Below are positions 18,501 to 60,774 of a stretch of 60,774 bases of DNA, piece after piece (position 1 is the first letter of the stretch; each line of letters begins with the position of its first letter). This DNA comes from Octopus bimaculoides (Eukaryota), in the NCBI RefSeq assembly GCF_001194135.2, contig NC_068993.1, positions 26,484,781 through 26,545,554 on the forward strand, read 5' to 3'. Under the pieces are notes generated by a model, which saw nothing but the letters and a program-made list of their open reading frames with translations, had not been told where the DNA came from and made no database searches. Both the position numbers and the translations under genes were made by a program.

Positions 18501-20741
18501 AAAAACTGTTATATATGGAGATATTAAGTTGTTGCTGGGTTGTTATTCTCCACAGTGTAGTGAACCTCAGTCTTCTGGTTAACTTTATCCATGAAGTGTA
18601 TATCCATAAAATATGGCTGAATGATTTGTAAAATAAACCTTTATCATTTTTTTAAATTCATAAATAGATCTTTGGGATTAGAACAGTATAAATTTGTTGG
18701 AATATGTTAGTTAAAACGTAACTTAATATATTACTATACTGTATTTTTAAACAATATATTTGACTACATCACTGGTTGAATGTGACTGAAATTTTAAACA
18801 CGCACAAACTTACATATCAGTTGGTTTAAAGGTTAAATTTATAAAAAATAATTCGTACTAGTGCTTAGATTTTAAGAATTTCTCAAATTTTAATTTGGTT
18901 AAGTATCAAAACTGATAATGTTTCTAATGAACCTGTGACCAAAATTGAATATATTTCCTTATTTGTTGAACCAAACTACGTGAAAAATCTCTTTGTACTC
19001 ATTTGTAAAAATTATCATCATAATGTTTGTTGGACAATGTATAGGAAGTGTTTATTTAGAGAAATCAAATGTTATCCCTAAGAAACCAATAAAATTTCAC
19101 ATTGACATCATCATTTAAGTATGTATTGGTAATTATAGCCAGAGTTTGGAAGGGTGCAGATTTAGGACAACAAAAAAAAAAAAATCACATGGTGTCAGGC
19201 AGGTTGATAACAGATAGGCTAAAATTAGGCAAATTTCTTATTTTTCTTTAAATGTAAGCATTAATATTGTAAATGGTATTATGTAATTATTTAAGTAGAA
19301 TGCTTCATTTTTGTCAGTTTAATTCATCTTATTGACACTTTTTGTATGTTAGGTTTTCTGTCAACTTTAGCCATACCTTTGCATAATTTGTTGATGATGC
19401 ATCTGGAGCCTTAAAATGATGCTTAATATATCACCCTCCAATCCTTTGGACTTCTCTCTCTCCTCAGTGACCACCTGGAAAGCTTCCACTTGATCCACTT
19501 GGAAGAGGTTCAGTGAAAGCAATAGTTTTGCCCTCACCATCAGGAAAGCATTCAACCATCTCGGGTATGCAATTCTCAACCTCCTGCTTACAGACTCCAC
19601 CCATATTTCACATCTTAGATTAGTAGCTTCCTGATTGCATCATAGTGGTATGTATTGATGGAGCTTTCTCTGTCCCACACTTAAATTATCTCTGGTGTTT
19701 CCCAGGTTTTGGTTTTGTCTCCAAATTTCTATATATCATGACTTTCATTCCTCCCTAATATGCAACACCTATATGTAGCCTAGACACTGCTGCATGCCAA
19801 ACCTACATTGATTTCATCAGCTTCGAGAGCATTGTTCAGGGGTTGTGTACCAATCTTGTTTCTTTTTTACCAGCAAAATAATACCAATACACCACATCCT
19901 CGCTAAACACAAATAACAACATTCTACTAGAGACTTCATTCTTTAACATTGTTAGGGCTGCATTCCAATGACTGATTTTTTTCTTCAGAGAATATACCCA
20001 GCAGTTGATGGTACTCCACTCAAGTGAGTGCTGCTCCATTGTGGAGATGCTACTACTAATGAGGCAGACAACCTAGATCGCATCCAGAAAAGTACCCCTT
20101 ATCTGATTGGAATTCATTCACAAATGGACACTCTCAAACCTCTAACTAACAACTGTAAATTTATCAGTTTTAAAGTAGTTGGTGAAGATTCAAAGAAGTT
20201 TATTTTGGCTGTTTTTCATATATTTATTTCCTAAAGAAATTTGTTATCGTTAAAGCAAAATAATGGCAAAGCTGTTATCAGTAGCTAAAAAAATTAGATA
20301 AAATTAATCCCAGTAATGAAGGAACCGGGTAAAATTCTTGTAGGATTAGTATTTTTCAGGAACTTTCTTCGAGTGTAATTTTTAGATATGGCAATTGGTT
20401 TCTTTTCACTTTGATATTTAGTAATTTTGCCAGGTTTGTTTAGTCTGTGTCAAATGACGATTTGTTGTTTTCTTTAATGAAGGTGTAAAGTGTTCAATTT
20501 AGAGAAGAGTTCTGTAAATGTTTAACTGACAGAATAATGAATCTTTTAGATTTGACCATTTTTCATTTATTTACTTTTTGAAGATTTTTACATTAATCAA
20601 AATGGCTAGTGATTCCTAGTGTTGAAGGAGTTTTTTTATATCATGTGAATCTCACAAATTATTATACTATCTTCCTAATTAATTTTTTCAGAATCCAAAT
20701 AGAATGGCAATCACCTATGAATGTCATCTATTTTGGTATAG

Positions 20742-20800
20742 TATATATCATGTTATATATCATGTTATATATCATGTTATATAGTATATATCATGTTAGA
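20742..20800. repeat. 12-bp minisatellite (ATATATCATGTT) x ~4
   Basis: Direct. Confidence 0.85.
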
Positions 20801-20893
20801 ATAGTGTCACTGAGATACAGTTGTAGGACTGCTAAAGAGTTGGGATAATTGGAGAAATAAAACTAATACCTCAATGTTGTTGTAAACATAGGT

Positions 20894-21105
20894 GCAGGGG
20901 TGGCTGTGTGGCAAGTAGCTTGCTTACCAACCACGTGGTCCCGGGTTCAGTCTTACTGCATGGCACCTTGGGCAAGTGTCTTTTACTTTAACCCTTTAGC
21001 ATTTAAACCGGCCAAAAGTATTCTGTCTGGGGTCAATTTGCTCAATTAAAGGTAGTGCTCCAGCATGACTGCAGTCAAATGACGGAAACAAGTAGAAGAG
21101 TAAAA
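20894..21105 (+). mobile_element. SINE family A chimeric with the left end of a TTAA MITE and internally deleted
   Basis: SINE head, then TTAA-CCCTTTAGC.. (20988-21029), then a jump to the SINE tail GGGGTCAATTTG..CAGCATG. Confidence 0.8.
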
Positions 21106-21145
21106 GATATGGAAATAATATAGTTTAATATTGACTCATCAGACC

Positions 21146-23360
21146 CATCATCATCATCATCGTTTAACATCCGCTTTCCATGCTAGCATGGGTTGGACGA
21201 TTTGACTGAGGACTGGTGAAACCAGATGGCAACACCAGGCTCCAATCTGATTTGGCAGAGTTTGGATGCCCTTCCTAACGCCAACCACTCAGAGTGTTGT
21301 GGGTGCTTTTACGTGCCACCAGCACGAAGGCCAGTCAGGGGGTACTGGCAACGGCCACGCTCGAAATGGTGTATTTTACGTGTCACCTGCACAGGAGCCA
21401 GTCCAGCGGGACTGGCAACGAACTCGCTCGAATGTCTTTATCACGTGCCAGGAATGCGACGTTGGTAACGGTCATGCTCAAATGGCACTATTTACGTGCC
21501 ACCGGCACGAAGCCAGGCAGCTGGTGCTCTGGCAACGATCACGCTCGGACAGTGCTCTTAGTGAGTTACTGGTACTGGTGCCATCACTATTTCGCTTTCG
21601 CTTGCCCCAACAGGGATTTTGGTCTCACTTGGCTTGCCGGGTCTTCTCATGCACAGCATATTTCCAAAGGTCTCGGTCAGAAGTCATTGCCTCGGTGAGG
21701 CCTGAAGTTCGGAGGTCGTGCTTCACCACCTCATCCCAGGTCTTCCTGGGCCTGCCTCTTCCACGGGTTCCCTCAACTGCTAGGGTGTGGCACTTTTTCA
21801 CACAGCTATCATCATCCATTCTCGCCACATGTCCATACCAGTGCAATCGTCTCTCTTGCACACCACAACTGATGCTTCTTAGGTTCAACTTTTCTCTCAA
21901 GATACTTACACTCTGTCGGGTATGCACACTGACATTACTCATCCATCGGAGCATACTGGCTTCATTCCTTGCGAGCTAACGCATATCCTCAGCAGTCAAG
22001 GCCCATGTTTCACTGCCATGTAGCATGGCTGTTCGTACACATGCGTCATACAGTCTGCCTTTTACTCTGAGCGAGAGGCCCTTTATTGCCAACAGAGGTA
22101 AGAGCTCTCTGAACTTTGCGCAGGCTATTCTTATTCTAGCAGCTACACTTTCAGCGCACCCACCCCCACTACTAACTTGGTCACCCAGATAGCGGAAGCT
22201 ATCAACTGCCTCTAGTTTTTCTCCTTAGAATGAGACAGAAGTTGTTTTCTGCATATTTTCAGTGTTTATTGCACCTGAACATCTGCCACATACAAAAACT
22301 AACTTCCTAGTTAACCTGCCTTTGATATTGCTGCACCTCTTATGTGTCCATAGCTTGCACTGGGTACATCTTATAGAGTTTCTACCTACACCTTTTCTAC
22401 AGATCGAGCAGGGCATCTACCTGAAGGGGTCTGTGTTTTGTCTACCTCCCTACTTATTAGAACGTTGGTTTTAGCTAAGTTGAACCTAAGGCCCTTCGAT
22501 TTTAGTCTCTGCTTCCACACCTGAAACTTCTCCTCTAGTTTTGATAGTGATTCGGCAATTAGTGCAAGGTCATCAGCATAGAGGAGCTCCCAGGGCTGTC
22601 TTGAATTCCTCTGTTATCGCCTGGAGGACAATGATAAATAGGAGGGGGCTGAGGACAGAACCTTGGTGGACCCCTACCTCTACCCGGAATTCTTCACTGT
22701 ACTCATTGCCAACCCTCACCTTACTGACAGCGTCTCTGTACATGGCTTGCACAGCTCTCACTAACCATTCTTCTATCCCTAGTTTCCTCATTGACCACCA
22801 GATAAGGGATTGGGGGACCCTGTCAAAGGCTTTCTCCATGTCAACGAAAGCCAGGTACAGAGGTTTATCCTTGGCTAGGTATTTCTCCTGCAGCTGTCTT
22901 ACCAGAAATATAGCATCAGTGGTGCTTTTCCCTGGCACAAACCCAAACTGCATCTCATCTAAGCTGACTCTCTCCCTAATTNNNNNNNNNNNNNNNNNNN
23001 NNNNNNNNNNNNNNCTATGACTCTCTCTGTGACTTTCATTACCTGATCTAATAGCTTGATACCTCTGTAATTATTTGTATCTAAAGCGTCACCTTTACCT
23101 TTGTAGCAGTTGACTAAGGTGCTGCTACACCAGTCATTGGGTATGACTCCTTCGTGTATCACCTGGTTAGCAATACGGGTGATTAGGCTATAGCCGACAC
23201 TGCCAGATATTTTGAGCATCTCTGCAGTGATTCCTGATGGGCCGGGGGCCTTCCCTGTCTTCATACTCATAATTGCTTTATCTACCATGGAACTGTCATC
23301 TCAGATAGCTGGTCCCTCTGTTGGGTCGACATTTGGCAGACTCTCTTTCTCCCATTCAAT
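21146..23360 (-). mobile_element. RTE-clade LINE, 5'-truncated, RT with inserted PHD-type finger, (GAT)n tail
   Basis: KTGKAPGPSG, NNYRGIKLL, QFGFVPGKSTTDAIF, FVDMEKAFDRVP, GVHQGSVLSPLLF, LLYADDL (22569-22580), VDSFRYLG (22184-22206), RRLHWYGHVARM, RGRGRPRKTW; frameshifts and stops; (CAT)n on + at 21146. Confidence 0.93.
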
Positions 23361-23598
23361 GATTATCCTTAATAGTTTCTTAGTCTGCTAATAAATTTTA
23401 ACTGTATTTTTAAGTTTTTGTAAGTTTTCTTTCTTTTGCTGACCTGTAAATCCAAATCTAATGCAGTTGTACAAGAAAATTATGTTTTAAAACATTACTT
23501 TAAATTTTGAGTGTACTTGGTGTTATCCAGGAAACATATCCTACAAACATTACATTTCTATCACAAATTTTGGCCAGTGTTCATATAGATGTTCATTA

Positions 23599-38921: not shown

Positions 38922-39639
38922 GACAATCACCGGTCTTCGATGAAATCTTTATTATAGGCACAAGGCCTGAACACAGAGGGCATATGCACAGACATGCGGA
39001 AACAAAAAACATCTGAAAGAATGAATTACAATGAATATGAGACGGTTTTCTCGGTCCCGCTCCTAGATGAAACTGTGATTTCTTTTTTACAATTAAACGT
39101 TCTTACAGTTTTTTCTTTTTTTCTTTTTTGGCTCGTTCTTTTTNNNNNNNNNNNNNNNNNNNNNNNNNNNNNNNNNNNNNNNNNNNNNNNNNNNNNNNNN
39201 NNNNNNNNNNNNNNNNNNNNNNNNNNNNNNNNNNNNNNNNNNNNNNNNNNNNNNNNNNNNNNNNNNNNNNNNNNNNNNNNNNNNNNNNNNNNNNNNNNNN
39301 NNNNNNNNNNNNNNNNNNNNNNNNNNNNNNNNNNNNNNNNNNNNNNNNNNNNNNNNNNNNNNNNNNNNNNNNNNNNNNNNNNNNNNNNNNNNNNNNNNNN
39401 NNNNNNNNNNNNNNNNNNNNNNNNNNNNNNNNNNNNNNNNNNNNNNNNNNNNNNNNNNNNNNNNNNNNNNNNNNNNNNNNNNNNNNNNNNNNNNNNNNNN
39501 NNNNNNNNNNNNNNNNNNNNNNNNNNNNNNNNNNNNNNNNNNNNNNNNNNNNNNNGGTAGCTTTACTCTTACTACCGATTTATATTTTACAATCTTTTTC
39601 TCTATTTCTGTATTTTTGGTATACATGACCAAATGCCAC

Positions 39640-57335: not shown

Positions 57336-57365
57336 TTCAATAATGCATGACATTAACAAATTCAG

Positions 57366-58417
57366 GTAGTCGATAGCTTCCGCTATCTGGGCGACCAAGT
57401 TAGTAGTGGGGGTGGGTGCGCTGAAAGTGTAGCTGCTAGAATAAGAATAGCCTGGGCAAAGTTTAGAGAGCTCTTACCCTTGCTGGCGACAAAGGGACTC
57501 TCACTCAGAGTAAAAGGCAGACTGTATGACGCATGCGTACGAACAACCATGCTACATGGCAGTGAAACATGGGCTGTAACTGCTGAGGACATACGTAAGC
57601 TCGCAAGGAATGAAGCCAGTATGCTCCGTTGGATGTGTAATGTCAATGTGAATACCCGTCAGAGTGTAAGTATCTTNNNNNNNNNNNNNNNNNNNNNNNN
57701 NNNNNNNNNNNNNNNNNNNNNNNNNNNNNNNNNNNNNNNNNNNNNNNNNNNNNNNNNNNNNNNNNNNNNNNNNNNNNNNNNNNNNNNNNNNNNNNNNNNN
57801 NNNNNNNNNNNNNNNNNNNNNNNNNNNNNNNNNNNNNNNNNNNNNNNNNNNNNNNNNNNNNNNNNNNNNNNNNNNNNNNNNNNNNNNNNNNNNNNNNNNN
57901 NNNNNNNNNNNNNNNNNNNNNNNNNNNNNNNNNNNNNNNNNNNNNNNNNNNNNNNNNNNNNNNNNNNNNNNNNNNNNNNNNNNNNNNNNNNNNNNNNNNN
58001 NNNNNNNNNNNNNNNNNNNNNNNNNNNNNNNNNNNNNNNNNNNNNNNNNNNNNNNNNNNNNNNNNNNNNNNNNNNNNNNNNNNNNNNNNNNNNNNNNNNN
58101 NNNNNNNNNNNNNNNNNNNNNNNNNNNNNNNNNNNNNNNNNNNNNNNNNNNNNNNNNNNNNNNNNNNNNNNNNNNNNNNNNNNNNNNNNNNNNNNNNNNN
58201 NNNNNNNNNNNNNNNNNNNNNNNNNNNNNNNNNNGACACGTAAAAGCACCCACTACACTCTCTGAGTGGTTGGCGTTAGGAAGGGCATCCAGCTGTAGAA
58301 ACTCTGCCAAATCAGACTGGAGCCTGGTGTTGCCATCCGGTTTCACCAGTCCTCAGTCAAATCGTCCAACCCATGCTAGCATGGAAAGCGGACGTTAAAC
58401 GATGATGATGATGATGA
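57366..58417 (+). mobile_element. RTE LINE, 5'-truncated, same family as 21146-23360, gap inside
   Basis: VVDSFRYLGDQVSSGGGC..LYDACVRTTMLHGSETWA..MLRWMC; 3' UTR and (GAT)n tail near-identical to the reverse complement of 21146-21300. Confidence 0.92.
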
Positions 58418-59699: not shown

Positions 59700-60345
59700 A
59701 TCGTCGTTTAACGTCCACTTTCCATGCTGGCATGAGTTGGATGATTTGACTAAGGGCTGGCATGCGAGAAGGTTGCACCAGGTTCCAATCCGATCTGGCA
59801 CGGTTTCTACAGTTGGATGCCCTTCCTAACGCCAACCTCTCTGAGAGTGTAGTGGATGCTTTTTACATGCCACCGGCATGAGGGCCACTCAGGCGGTACT
59901 GGAATCGACCACGCTCAAATGGTGCTTTTAATGTGCCGCTGGCTTGCGTGCCAATCAGGCGGTACTGTCATCGGCCACAACAGCGGTTTCAATTGCCTTA
60001 ACAGGTCTTTGAAAGTGCAGATTATTGCCCAATGATTGAAGGGTACTCTTACATGGGCTGGTTATGCTGCATTGGCATAGGCGACGGTCATGGTATTAGT
60101 TGGCTTGCCGGTCCTTCTCAAGTACAGTCTATTTCCAAACGTTTCCGTGACGCCCATTGTTCAGAGGATGCTTCACCACCTCATCCCAGGTCTTCTTGGG
60201 TCTACCTCTCACTCAGGTTCCCTGTAATACTGGAGTCTCACACTTTTTCACACAGCTGTCCTCGTCCCTTTGCAACACATGACCATACCAATGTCTTGCA
60301 CACCCCCCTCTGATGCTACTTAGGTCCAGGTTTTCTCTCAGAGTG
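59700..60345 (-). mobile_element. RTE LINE 3' end, divergent subfamily
   Basis: + strand CGTTTAACGTCCACTTTCCATGCTGGCATG..GGATGCCCTTCCTAACGCCAACC matches the 21146 3' UTR; C-terminal coding remnant (RWYGHV..GRPKKTWDEVV on -). Confidence 0.85.
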
Positions 60346-60774
60346 CTTCTATTTATGTATATATATTTTTATATATATATATATAGAAATATATTAATAG
60401 CTTATATATTTATATATATATGTATTTATAAGTCAGTAAATAGTGGGGTTGTGTTAACCGCACGTGGAGAAATAATAGGAAAATGTAAAAAAGCCAGAAT
60501 GCTGAACTGGGAGCATAATTTAATTAAGATTTTTCCTAACCGGTTTTCATTGCGATGAAGCAAATTATCAAGAAGGAGAATGAAAATGTGAAGTACAAAA
60601 AAGTACAAAATGAAGAAAATAATATATAAAACAATAATATATAAAAAAAATAAATATACCCATACATTATATTGTCTTTGAGCTTTTGTAGTTCAATAGT
60701 AGTTCATGTATAAATTGGTAGGAAAAATAAGGATGCATGAGAGTTGAGTTTTGTTAGGTTTAAAAAAAGGGTTA

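What the first reader, a model, noticed from the sequence alone, without database searches (positions are those of the whole stretch)
22279..22410. PHD-type (C4HC3) zinc finger inserted inside the reverse-transcriptase domain of an RTE LINE
Seen: between YADD/KGLRFNLAKT and VDSFRYLG, a stretch that is short in typical non-LTR RTs, there is CSIC-x10-CTQC-KLWT-H-KR-C-x14-CGRC. This is the C4HC3 spacing with the W-x-H-x2-C signature, and all eight ligands are intact. Established: PHD fingers are often histone-tail readers, and PHD domains are known in ORF1 of some CR1-like elements. A finger embedded in the ORF2 RT core of an RTE is an unusual placement. Inference: the RT may carry a built-in chromatin reader that steers insertion, or an RNA/protein-binding module. 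It may already be present in repeat libraries but is, to my knowledge, not functionally characterised.
Basis: partly seen in the sequence, partly recalled or inferred. Interest (0 to 1): 0.72.

Follow-up and report, generated by a model that had tools for sequence, protein, structure and literature searches.

The report
PHD finger inside RTE reverse transcriptase
A dead copy of an octopus-type jumping gene (an RTE-like LINE) carries a genuine PHD zinc finger, conserved across its whole family, inserted in a surface loop of its reverse transcriptase at the spot where the related R2 element touches its target DNA; it probably helps the enzyme dock on chromatin, but this is untested.

Summary
On the minus strand, 22279-22410 encodes CSIC-x10-CTQC-x4-H-x2-C-x14-CGRC, the only C4HC3 match in the window (0 in 200 shuffles). 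It passes Pfam's PHD threshold and models as a PHD fold.

It lies between RT motif 6 (NLAKT) and motif 7 (FRYLG). That spacing is 92-110 aa in this family and 30-35 aa in PHD-less relatives.

The window copy is dead: 5'-truncated, with two frameshifts and in-frame stops. The family is not. More than 100 distinct intact ORFs of 950-1130 aa (APE endonuclease + RT + PHD) carry the finger. All eight zinc ligands are 100% conserved in 116 of them. Named hosts are Octopus and Hydractinia.

The insertion point is the R2 "RT6a loop" position. In R2 that loop reads upstream target DNA and is needed for nicking. The finger is basic (mean +6.4) and flexibly tethered. It keeps the Pygopus-type pocket tryptophan and isoleucine but lacks the acidic lip.

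Best reading (about 0.45): a module that docks the RT on target DNA or chromatin during target-primed reverse transcription. A methyl-lysine-specific reader is not excluded.

I found no paper describing it. I rate it a new variant of a known kind, of moderate interest.

The parts
22279..22410 (-). PHD finger proper, first to eighth zinc ligand (C4HC3): CSIC-x10-CTQC-KLWT-H-KR-C-x14-CGRC
   Evidence: Translation. Pfam PF00628 28.8 bits > GA 24. Family profile matches PDB Pygopus, PHF23, PHF13 and BPTF PHD fingers. AF2 model pLDDT 80.9, Foldseek top hits all PHD fingers. Only match in the window, 0 in 200 shuffles.
22225..22451 (-). Whole insertion between RT motif 6 and motif 7: N-linker (REVDKTQTPSGR+W codon hit by a frameshift), PHD, and C-linker SGAINTENMQKTTSVSF ending in an in-frame stop
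   Evidence: The PHD-less relative P0177 aligns to 22589-22452 (aa 726-771) and resumes at 22224 (aa 785). That is 76 codons here against 14 there. In the RT model the linkers have lower pLDDT (65-70) than the finger (85-92).
22452..22496 (-). RT motif 6 (motif D region): KGLRFNLAKTNVLIS
   Evidence: N and K are invariant in alignment A1. It aligns to R2Bm 'GLRLNCRKSAVLSM', which ends at residue 668.
22180..22197 (-). RT motif 7 (primer-grip region): FRYLGD
   Evidence: F, Y, L, G and D are each >=90% conserved in A1. It aligns to R2Bm 'RWRYLG' at about 697-703.
22569..22580 (-). RT catalytic motif 5, YADD, in a different reading frame from the segments on either side
   Evidence: The stretch between about 22596 and about 22416 reads in another frame (two separate tblastn HSPs).
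21625..23378 (-). Remnant of the LINE ORF: RT fingers/palm, PHD insertion, thumb and C-terminal domain. It equals aa ~461-1028 of the intact relative P0132. The endonuclease is missing (5'-truncated copy). There are 2 frameshifts, in-frame stops at 23301-23303, 22225-22227 and 21976-21978, and an N gap at 22982-23014. The ORF stop is at 21625-21627.
   Evidence: tblastn with P0132, P0124 and P0137. Pfam RVT_1 E=5.5e-27. AF2 pLDDT 85.7 with Foldseek matches to R2 and LINE-1 ORF2p. Coordinates.
21146..21624 (-). 3' UTR ending in an (ATG)5 trinucleotide tail (21146-21160 on the + strand as CAT repeats). It contains imperfect tandem units of about 65-67 bp.
   Evidence: Sequence. TRF period 67, 1.9 copies at 21307-21432. 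The relative L002 also ends in a trinucleotide run, (TCA)n.

Best explanation
The finger is a defining, selectively maintained part of a deep lineage of RTE-type LINEs. It is an autonomous PHD zinc module of about 45 aa, on flexible linkers, grafted into the surface loop between RT motifs 6 and 7. That is the 'RT6a' position.

Most likely it is a target-site docking module used during target-primed reverse transcription. It would project from the palm/thumb face along which upstream target DNA runs. It would hold the RT on the target through its very basic surface (DNA backbone, nucleosomal DNA), possibly together with the H3 N-terminal tail in its retained PHD groove.

Shown: the finger is real, it is a PHD fold, where it is inserted, that it is conserved as strongly as the catalytic residues, and that the same loop contacts target DNA in R2.

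Inferred: that RTE target DNA follows the R2 path, that the finger reaches it, and what it binds. In the window itself the copy is dead and does nothing.
For: 1. Real PHD: Pfam score above the gathering cut-off. The family profile matches Pygopus PHD at E=3e-8, followed by many other PHD fingers. The AF2 model matches TAF3, BPTF, Pygo and BHC80 PHDs at rmsd about 2-2.5 A, TM 0.6-0.7, prob 1.00.

2. Selection: 116 intact full-length ORFs sharing 42-58% identity keep all eight ligands at 100%. The PHD core is as conserved (0.61-0.69 top-residue fraction) as the EN and most of the RT, and more than the linkers (0.29-0.5). P-C-x-V-C-x2-GVG-x-NSI-x-C-x2-C-x2-W-x-H is 85-100% conserved at its named positions in 131 members.

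3. Single insertion: motif 6 to motif 7 spacing is 92-110 aa against 30-35 aa. The PHD-less relatives form their own NJ clade.

4. Position: R2Bm motif 6 ends at residue 668 and motif 7 starts at about 697 in the profile alignment. The R2Bm RT6a loop is residues 672-677. His673 and Lys675 read the upstream target DNA, and deleting the loop inhibits nicking (PMC10499050). In vertebrate R2 the 6a loop also wedges into target DNA (PMC12180492).

5. Module character: finger pLDDT is 85-92 and flanking linkers 65-70. Mean net charge is +6.4 over 44 aa.

6. This family has no conserved C-terminal Cys/His cluster. L1 and R2 use a C-terminal zinc finger to unzip target DNA (PMC7617806).
Against: - No coordinates were available, so I could not measure where the finger sits relative to the modelled nucleic-acid path.
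- The R2 authors state that the 6a loop looks unique to R2 among non-LTR RTs, so the DNA path may differ in APE-type elements.
- In L1 the upstream/second-primer DNA is held by thumb, wrist and CTD. No role was reported for the motif 6-7 loop.
- Canonical RTEs work without any such finger, so it is an accessory, not a necessity.
- Basic charge does not prove DNA binding. By my own count from the alignment, the H3K4me3-binding PHF13 finger is also net positive.
- No binding, insertion-site or mutational data exist.
Confidence: 0.45

Rival explanations
1. Methyl-lysine-specific histone reader. The finger binds the H3 tail carrying K4me2/3, or unmodified K4, and so biases where the element inserts, as RAG2-PHD or chromodomain integrases do for other mobile systems.
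For: - The nearest solved relatives by profile are almost all H3K4me2/3 readers: Pygo1/2, PHF23, ALFIN, PHF13, BPTF, PHF2, TAF3, CFP1.
- The family shares the 'Y-P-C-G-x-C' start with Pygopus.
- The family Trp (95%) aligns with Pygo2 W353, the divider of the A1 and K4me pockets.
- The family Ile (90%) aligns with I344 of the T3 channel.
- An aromatic residue (W/Y/F, 87%) sits two residues before Cys1 (PMC2927781).
Against: - The acidic 'EVND' Pygo loop, including the K4-pocket lip D339, is replaced by a loop two residues shorter, K-G-V-G.
- The positions matching the PHF13 cage residues are G/V and S. These are F241 and M246 by my recollection and by counting on the alignment.
- No conserved acidic residue is present to take H3R2 or K4me0.
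- Net charge is +6.4, facing a basic tail.
- The Trp before the His is part of the general Pfam PHD consensus, so it discriminates weakly.
Confidence: 0.2
2. Template-side module. The basic finger binds the element's own 3' UTR RNA or the RNA:cDNA hybrid, helping 'stringent' recognition of the 3' end or processivity.
For: - The finger is strongly basic.
- It sits next to the primer-grip motif 7.
- The 3' ends appear conserved in the family. The 3'-terminal nucleotide block translates as PTHASMESG here and PTHASMENGR in P0027.
- Elements end in trinucleotide tails.
Against: - In R2 the RNA is held by NTE-1, thumb and linker, not by 6a, which faces DNA.
- PHD fingers are rarely RNA binders (general knowledge).
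- The flexible tether and outward-facing loop argue against a role inside the hybrid channel.
Confidence: 0.15
3. Protein-recruitment or structural brace. The finger binds a host factor (as Pygo PHD binds BCL9 on its rear face) or another part of the LINE protein, or it simply stabilises the palm-thumb junction.
For: - Pygopus-like fingers have a second, non-histone binding face.
- The near-invariant G-V-G-x-N-S segment suggests a specific conserved contact of unknown partner.
Against: - Low-confidence linkers and a self-contained fold do not look like a brace.
- No partner is indicated by any result here.
Confidence: 0.15
4. Neutral passenger, chance motif or assembly artefact.
For: The window copy is degenerate and the assembly is gapped.
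Against: - 0 matches in 200 shuffles.
- The same finger is at the same place in hundreds of independent sequences from different sources.
- Ligands are 100% conserved in 116 intact ORFs.
Confidence: 0.02

Closest known systems
R2 retrotransposon 'RT6a loop' (Bombyx mori R2Bm residues 672-677; also vertebrate R2)
   Same: It occupies the same topological site: an extra element between RT motif 6 and motif 7 of a non-LTR RT (alignment; PMC10499050). In R2 it contacts upstream target DNA and is needed for nicking.
   Different: R2's 6a is a short loop of a few residues in an RLE-type, site-specific element. Here it is a complete zinc-finger domain of about 45 aa plus linkers, in an APE-type element. 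A DNA contact is only inferred here.
PHD domains of CR1/L2 (Jockey-superfamily) LINEs (Kapitonov & Jurka 2003; Metcalfe & Casane 2014)
   Same: A PHD finger carried by a non-LTR retrotransposon. It is functionally uncharacterised and was proposed to help general targeting of host chromatin.
   Different: Those fingers are in ORF1 or at the N-terminus of ORF2, in a different superfamily. This one is inside the RT core of an RTE-type ORF2. That paper describes the ORF2 structure as 'highly constrained'.
Pygopus PHD finger (Pygo1/2, H3K4me2 reader with a BCL9-binding rear face)
   Same: It is the best solved-structure match to the family profile (E=3e-8). It shares the Y-P-C-G-x-C start, the pocket-divider Trp, the T3-channel Ile and the C-[ST]-G-[IM] turn. 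It is also among the Foldseek hits.
   Different: The acidic Pygo loop (EVND) is absent. The family finger averages +6.4 net charge. The Pygo2 finger is about -5 by my own count from the alignment. The context is a polymerase, not a transcription co-factor.
C-terminal zinc finger / zinc knuckle of LINE-1 ORF2p and R2
   Same: A zinc module of a LINE protein that handles target DNA during TPRT.
   Different: The fold (C2HC / CCHC) and the position (C-terminal domain) are different. This family has no conserved C-terminal Cys/His cluster. Functional substitution is speculation.
Chromatin-reader modules of other mobile systems (RAG2 PHD-H3K4me3; chromodomain integrases of chromoviruses; LEDGF-tethered lentiviral integrase). 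General knowledge, not tested here.
   Same: The concept of coupling integration or recombination to chromatin through a reader domain.
   Different: These are different enzymes and different placement. None is a finger inside a reverse-transcriptase palm.

Membership tests
PHD finger (Pfam PF00628) | C4HC3 ligand pattern with PHD spacing | tested here: met
   C-x2-C-x10-C-x2-C-x4-H-x2-C-x14-C-x2-C at 22279-22410. All eight ligand columns are 100% conserved in 116 full-length relatives.
PHD finger (Pfam PF00628) | Profile score above the curated threshold, better than rival treble-clef/cross-brace families | tested here: met
   PHD scores 28.8 bits against GA 24. C1_1 (21.2 vs 26.5), C1_2, PHD_2 and RING-like models all fall below their cut-offs. 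Several relatives also pass.
PHD finger (Pfam PF00628) | Signature aromatic residue two positions before the seventh ligand | tested here: met
   The family consensus is F-x-C-x2-C (FVCGRC in the window). It aligns with Pygo2 W377, the PHD signature Trp.
PHD finger (Pfam PF00628) | Cross-braced PHD fold | tested here: met
   AF2 model pLDDT 80.9. Foldseek's top 24 PDB hits are all PHD fingers (the first non-PHD, an EEA1 FYVE domain, is at rank 25), TM 0.55-0.70, rmsd about 2-3 A. This is prediction only.
PHD finger (Pfam PF00628) | Binds two Zn2+ ions | not testable with these tools
   Needs metal analysis or an experimental structure.
H3K4me2/3-reading PHD subclass | Aromatic cage / K4me pocket (Trp before the His plus 1-3 further aromatic or Met residues) and acidic contacts for the H3 N-terminus, R2 or K4 | tested here: inconclusive
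   Trp is 95% conserved, an aromatic at Cys1-2 is 87%, and the T3-channel Ile is 90%. These align to Pygo2 W353 and I344. The acidic Pygo loop is missing, the PHF13 cage-equivalent positions are G/V and S, and net charge is +6.4.
RTE-group non-LTR retrotransposon | One long ORF with an N-terminal APE-type endonuclease followed by the RT | tested here: met
   Intact relatives of 950-1130 aa carry Exo_endo_phos + RVT_1 (+PHD). The window copy itself lacks the EN because it is 5'-truncated.
RTE-group non-LTR retrotransposon | No RNase H and no C-terminal Cys/His (CCHC) motif | tested here: met
   Pfam finds no RNase H. There is no conserved Cys/His cluster C-terminal of the RT in 116 sequences.
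RTE-group non-LTR retrotransposon | 3' end is a short simple-sequence repeat rather than poly(A) | tested here: met
   (ATG)5 tail at 21146-21160. L002 has a (TCA)n tail.
RTE-group non-LTR retrotransposon | RT groups with reference RTE-clade elements (BovB, RTE-1, Rex3) rather than RTEX, Proto2 or others | not tested
   No reference repeat library was available. The C-terminal 'RLRW-GHV-R...GRGRP...W' block resembles BovB only from my memory. ORF1 is absent in L004, but a 364-aa ORF1 is present in L003, so the RTE versus RTEX sub-clade is open.
R2-type RT6a insertion | Extra segment between RT motifs 6 and 7 | tested here: met
   The profile alignment puts R2Bm 585-668 on motifs 4-6 and 694-715 on motif 7. 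RT6a is residues 672-677.
R2-type RT6a insertion | Contacts upstream target DNA; required for first-strand nicking | not testable with these tools
   Needs biochemistry or a structure of an RTE TPRT complex.
CR1/L2-type LINE PHD | PHD located in ORF1 or at the extreme N-terminus of ORF2 | tested here: not met
   Here the finger is internal to the RT, about 770 aa into ORF2. The 364-aa ORF1 of L003 has no PHD hit.

The most novel reading that the evidence does not exclude
The RT of this LINE lineage contains a working histone-tail reader. TPRT initiation would then be gated by the chromatin state of the target nucleosome. This would be the first chromatin reader built into a LINE reverse transcriptase. 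It would give these elements a mark-dependent insertion landscape in cephalopod, cnidarian and other marine-invertebrate genomes.
Probability: 0.22. Interest if true: 0.8.

Novelty: new variant of a known kind. Interest (0 to 1): 0.55.

Why it matters
LINE ORF2 architecture is usually treated as rigid. Known accessory domains sit in ORF1 or at the termini.

Here a complete reader-type zinc domain is kept for a long evolutionary span inside the RT. It sits at the one loop that recent R2 structures show touching target DNA. That points to the motif 6-7 loop as a general, evolvable target-selection site in non-LTR RTs.

It also gives a concrete handle for asking how APE-type LINEs engage chromatin. 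Intact natural sequences and a testable point-mutant set (ligand Cys, the Trp, the GVGxNS block) are already at hand. The same loop is of interest to groups engineering retroelement proteins for gene insertion.

For genome annotation, it explains why many invertebrate 'PHD-type zinc finger' gene models are LINE fragments (see the UniRef names).

Tried and rejected
- Chance motif: rejected.
- Non-PHD fold (C1, RING, FYVE): these scored below their thresholds or well below the PHD hits.
- Insertion private to this copy or species: rejected. It is found in hundreds of sequences, including Hydractinia and Tara Oceans scaffolds.
- Literature (plus reading 12 papers): I found no description of a PHD inside an RTE RT. 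The octopus RTE-2_OV paper reports a 'C2H2 zinc finger, rare in RTE elements', but its sequence is not in the held supplements. I could not tell whether it is the same finger.
- Host identification through ENA sample ids gave accession numbers only.
- The third protein search, with the PHD-only profile, returned only short unnamed ORF fragments and added no taxa.
I re-ran it with the exact window ORF.
- Placing the finger relative to the palm and thumb failed: the structure tool returns no coordinates.
- Rfam and tRNA scans of 20500-23500 found nothing.
- The L1 TPRT paper gave no statement about the motif 6-7 loop.
- Pfam PF27108.1 is precomputed on many members but is absent from the local Pfam copy. 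Its identity is unknown. It might already be a curated family for this finger.
Full report
**What is in the sequence**

The feature lies on the minus strand. The ORF list and a three-frame translation of 23400-21100 show a non-LTR reverse transcriptase remnant. It runs from about 23378 down to a stop at 21625-21627. A 3' UTR of about 480 bp follows and ends in (ATG)5 at 21146-21160.

The peptide CSICRKGVGRNSIRCTQCKLWTHKRCSNIKGRLTRKLVFVCGRC maps exactly to 22279-22410. A relaxed C4HC3 pattern finds only this site in all six frames of the 60.8-kb window, and none in 200 shuffles.

The peptide lies between YADD (22569-22580) / KGLRFNLAKT (22467-22496) and FRYLGD (22180-22197).

**State of this copy**

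The copy is a fossil.
- It aligns only to residues ~461-1028 of intact relatives, so the endonuclease is missing. This is a 5'-truncated LINE insertion.
- The segment 22596-22416, which includes YADD, is in a different frame from its neighbours. This implies two 1-base indels. One falls in the codon two positions before the first Cys, where relatives have W, Y or F.
- In-frame stops lie at 23301-23303, 22225-22227 and 21976-21978.
- Ns cover 22982-23014.
- A second, 5'-truncated copy at 57360-57676 (+) starts right at motif 7 and is open where the main copy has a stop. A third degenerate fragment lies at 60159-60347 (-).

The family is therefore multi-copy in this genome. GC content is 34%. 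The best named hits are Octopus bimaculoides and O. vulgaris, so the host is most likely an octopod.

**Is it a PHD finger?**

Yes, by every test available.
- Pfam PF00628 scores 28.8 bits (cut-off 24). C1, RING-like and other models fall below their cut-offs.
- The single sequence matches the PHF13 and PHF23 PHD fingers in the PDB.
- A profile of 49 family fingers matches Pygopus PHD at E=3e-8. It then matches PHF23, ALFIN-like, PHF13, BPTF, PHF2, TAF3, CFP1 and others.
- An AF2 model of the finger alone (pLDDT 80.9) gives Foldseek hits that are almost all PHD fingers (the top 24; a FYVE domain is at rank 25). TM is 0.55-0.70 and rmsd about 2-3 A.

**Is it a family feature?**

- The first homologue search gave 346 hits. 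About 80 of the 120 listed (mostly ORF fragments) carry the intact pattern at the same place, including Octopus and Hydractinia proteins.
- An exhaustive profile search and a search with a full-length member found more than 100 distinct intact ORFs of 950-1130 aa. Pfam finds Exo_endo_phos + RVT_1 + PHD in them.
- Of 122 long sequences, 103 match the strict pattern between motifs 6 and 7. Most of the rest are spacing variants (H-x4-C) or cases where my motif regex failed.
- In a MAFFT alignment of 116 full-length sequences sharing about 42-58% identity, all eight ligand columns are 100% conserved. The finger core is as conserved as the endonuclease and most of the RT. No other Cys/His cluster exists, and in particular no C-terminal knuckle.
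- Over 131 fingers the motif [WYF]-P-C-x-V-C-x-K-G-V-G-x-N-S-I-x-C-x2-C-x2-W-[VI]-H-K-[RK]-C is strongly conserved. Named positions are mostly 85-100%; the first K, the second K and the [WYF] position are 66%, 71% and 87%. Mean net charge is +6.4.
- Motif 6 to motif 7 spacing is 92-110 aa in these sequences and 30-35 aa in the nearest PHD-less relatives. That is an insertion of about 62-65 aa.
- In an NJ tree of the RT with the insert removed, the nine genuine PHD-less sequences form one clade apart from the PHD-bearing ones. This fits a single ancient acquisition. The rooting is by midpoint only. Two 'PHD-less' sequences nested inside the PHD group are a regex artefact and a short gene model.

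**What kind of element is it?**

The architecture fits the RTE group.
- Relatives have APE + RT in one long ORF.
- There is no RNase H and no C-terminal CCHC.
- The tail is a trinucleotide repeat.

I could not run a phylogeny against reference RTE, RTEX or Proto2 elements.

One Tara Oceans scaffold carries a 364-aa ORF1, with only weak coiled-coil-like Pfam hits, directly upstream of ORF2. Another genomic copy has no ORF1. The sub-clade therefore stays open.

**Where in the RT, and what that suggests**

The AF2 model of the window's RT + finger + thumb has a mean pLDDT of 85.7. It matches R2 and LINE-1 ORF2p structures. In that model the finger is confident (85-92) and the linkers on both sides are weaker (65-70). 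That is what a folded module on flexible tethers looks like.

The family profile aligns R2Bm residues 585-668 to motifs 4-6 and 694-715 to motif 7. The R2Bm cryo-EM paper defines the 'RT6a loop' as residues 672-677. It shows that His673 and Lys675 read the upstream target DNA, and that deleting the loop inhibits nicking (PMC10499050). Vertebrate R2 structures show the same loop wedging into target DNA (PMC12180492).

The finger is thus inserted at the one RT loop known to touch target DNA in a non-LTR element. L1 and R2 also use a C-terminal zinc finger to unzip target DNA (PMC7617806). This family has none.

From this I infer, but have not shown, that the finger is a target-docking module used during TPRT.

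**Histone reader or DNA clamp?**

For a reader:
- The closest solved relatives are H3K4me2/3 readers.
- The family Trp aligns with Pygo2 W353, which divides the A1 and K4me pockets.
- The Ile aligns with I344 of the T3 channel.
- An aromatic residue sits two before Cys1 in the same Y-P-C-G-x-C context (PMC2927781).

Against a reader:
- The acidic Pygo loop with the pocket-lip Asp is replaced by a shorter K-G-V-G.
- The positions equivalent to the PHF13 cage residues are G/V and S.
- No conserved acidic residue is available for the H3 N-terminus, R2 or K4.
- The domain is very basic.

Charge alone is not decisive. I therefore rate 'docks on target DNA or chromatin, ligand unresolved' at about 0.45. 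I rate 'methyl-specific reader that steers insertion' at about 0.2, RNA or hybrid binding at about 0.15, host-factor or brace at about 0.15, and neutral or artefact at about 0.02.

**Comparison with what is known, and novelty**

PHD fingers in LINEs are documented for ORF1, or the ORF2 N-terminus, of CR1/L2 elements. No functional study exists, and that work describes the ORF2 structure as highly constrained (PMC4120745).

None of my literature searches found a description of a PHD inside an RTE RT. Databases already auto-label fragments as 'Zinc finger PHD-type domain-containing protein'. A Pfam family that I could not inspect, PF27108.1, is precomputed on many members. The octopus RTE-2_OV paper mentions an unusual zinc finger without giving a sequence I could check.

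I rate it a new variant of a known kind: an RTE-type LINE with a reader-type domain at the RT6a site. Interest is 0.55.

Noticed in passing
window 21290-21560 (minus-strand 3' UTR): The 3' UTR holds imperfect tandem units of about 65-67 bp (…TTTACGTGCCACC…GGCAACG…CTCGAA…). TRF reports period 67 with 1.9 copies at 21307-21432. By eye there are about four units. The function is unknown; it could be the RNA element that the RT recognises.
   Followed up: partly
window 21146-21230 (minus strand): The last ~60 nt before the (ATG)5 tail translate in one frame as PTHASMESG. The relative P0027 ends in PTHASMENGR. The 3'-terminal nucleotide block therefore seems conserved across distant family members, as expected for a 'stringent' LINE 3' recognition signal.
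   Followed up: no
window 20880-21100 (+): Directly beyond the LINE tail lies a stretch with tRNA-promoter-like boxes (…GGCTGTGTGG… and …GGGTTCAGTC…) that looks like a tRNA-derived SINE head. ARAGORN and Rfam report nothing there.
   Followed up: partly
window 57360-57676 (+) and 60159-60347 (-): There are two more fragments of the same LINE family. The first starts exactly at RT motif 7, is open-reading and about 90% identical by eye to the main copy, and runs into an N gap. The second is a degenerate C-terminal piece.
   Followed up: partly
window 20742-20783: A perfect 12-bp minisatellite, (TATATATCATGT)x3.5.
   Followed up: no
window, ten N runs (e.g. 39144-39555, 57677-58234, 22982-23014): The window comes from a gapped draft assembly. 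One gap lies inside the RT of the element studied, so some apparent defects of this copy could be assembly errors.
   Followed up: no
proteins P0005, P0340, P0358, P0438: Eukaryotic LINE ORFs of this family are deposited as proteins of bacterial MAGs (Herbaspirillum sp., Terriglobia bacterium, Candidatus Thiodiazotropha ex Lucinoma). This is host or eukaryote contamination of public metagenome bins. It also hints that lucinid bivalves carry the family.
   Followed up: no
L003:210-1304 (+): A Tara Oceans scaffold holds a full element with a 364-aa ORF1 (only weak coiled-coil-type Pfam hits) five bases upstream of the PHD-bearing ORF2. Other members (L004) have no ORF1. ORF1 content therefore varies within the lineage.
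   Followed up: partly
many family members: Pfam accession PF27108.1 is precomputed on the finger-bearing proteins but is missing from the local Pfam copy. Scans of those proteins did not return it. Its name and scope are unknown.
   Followed up: partly
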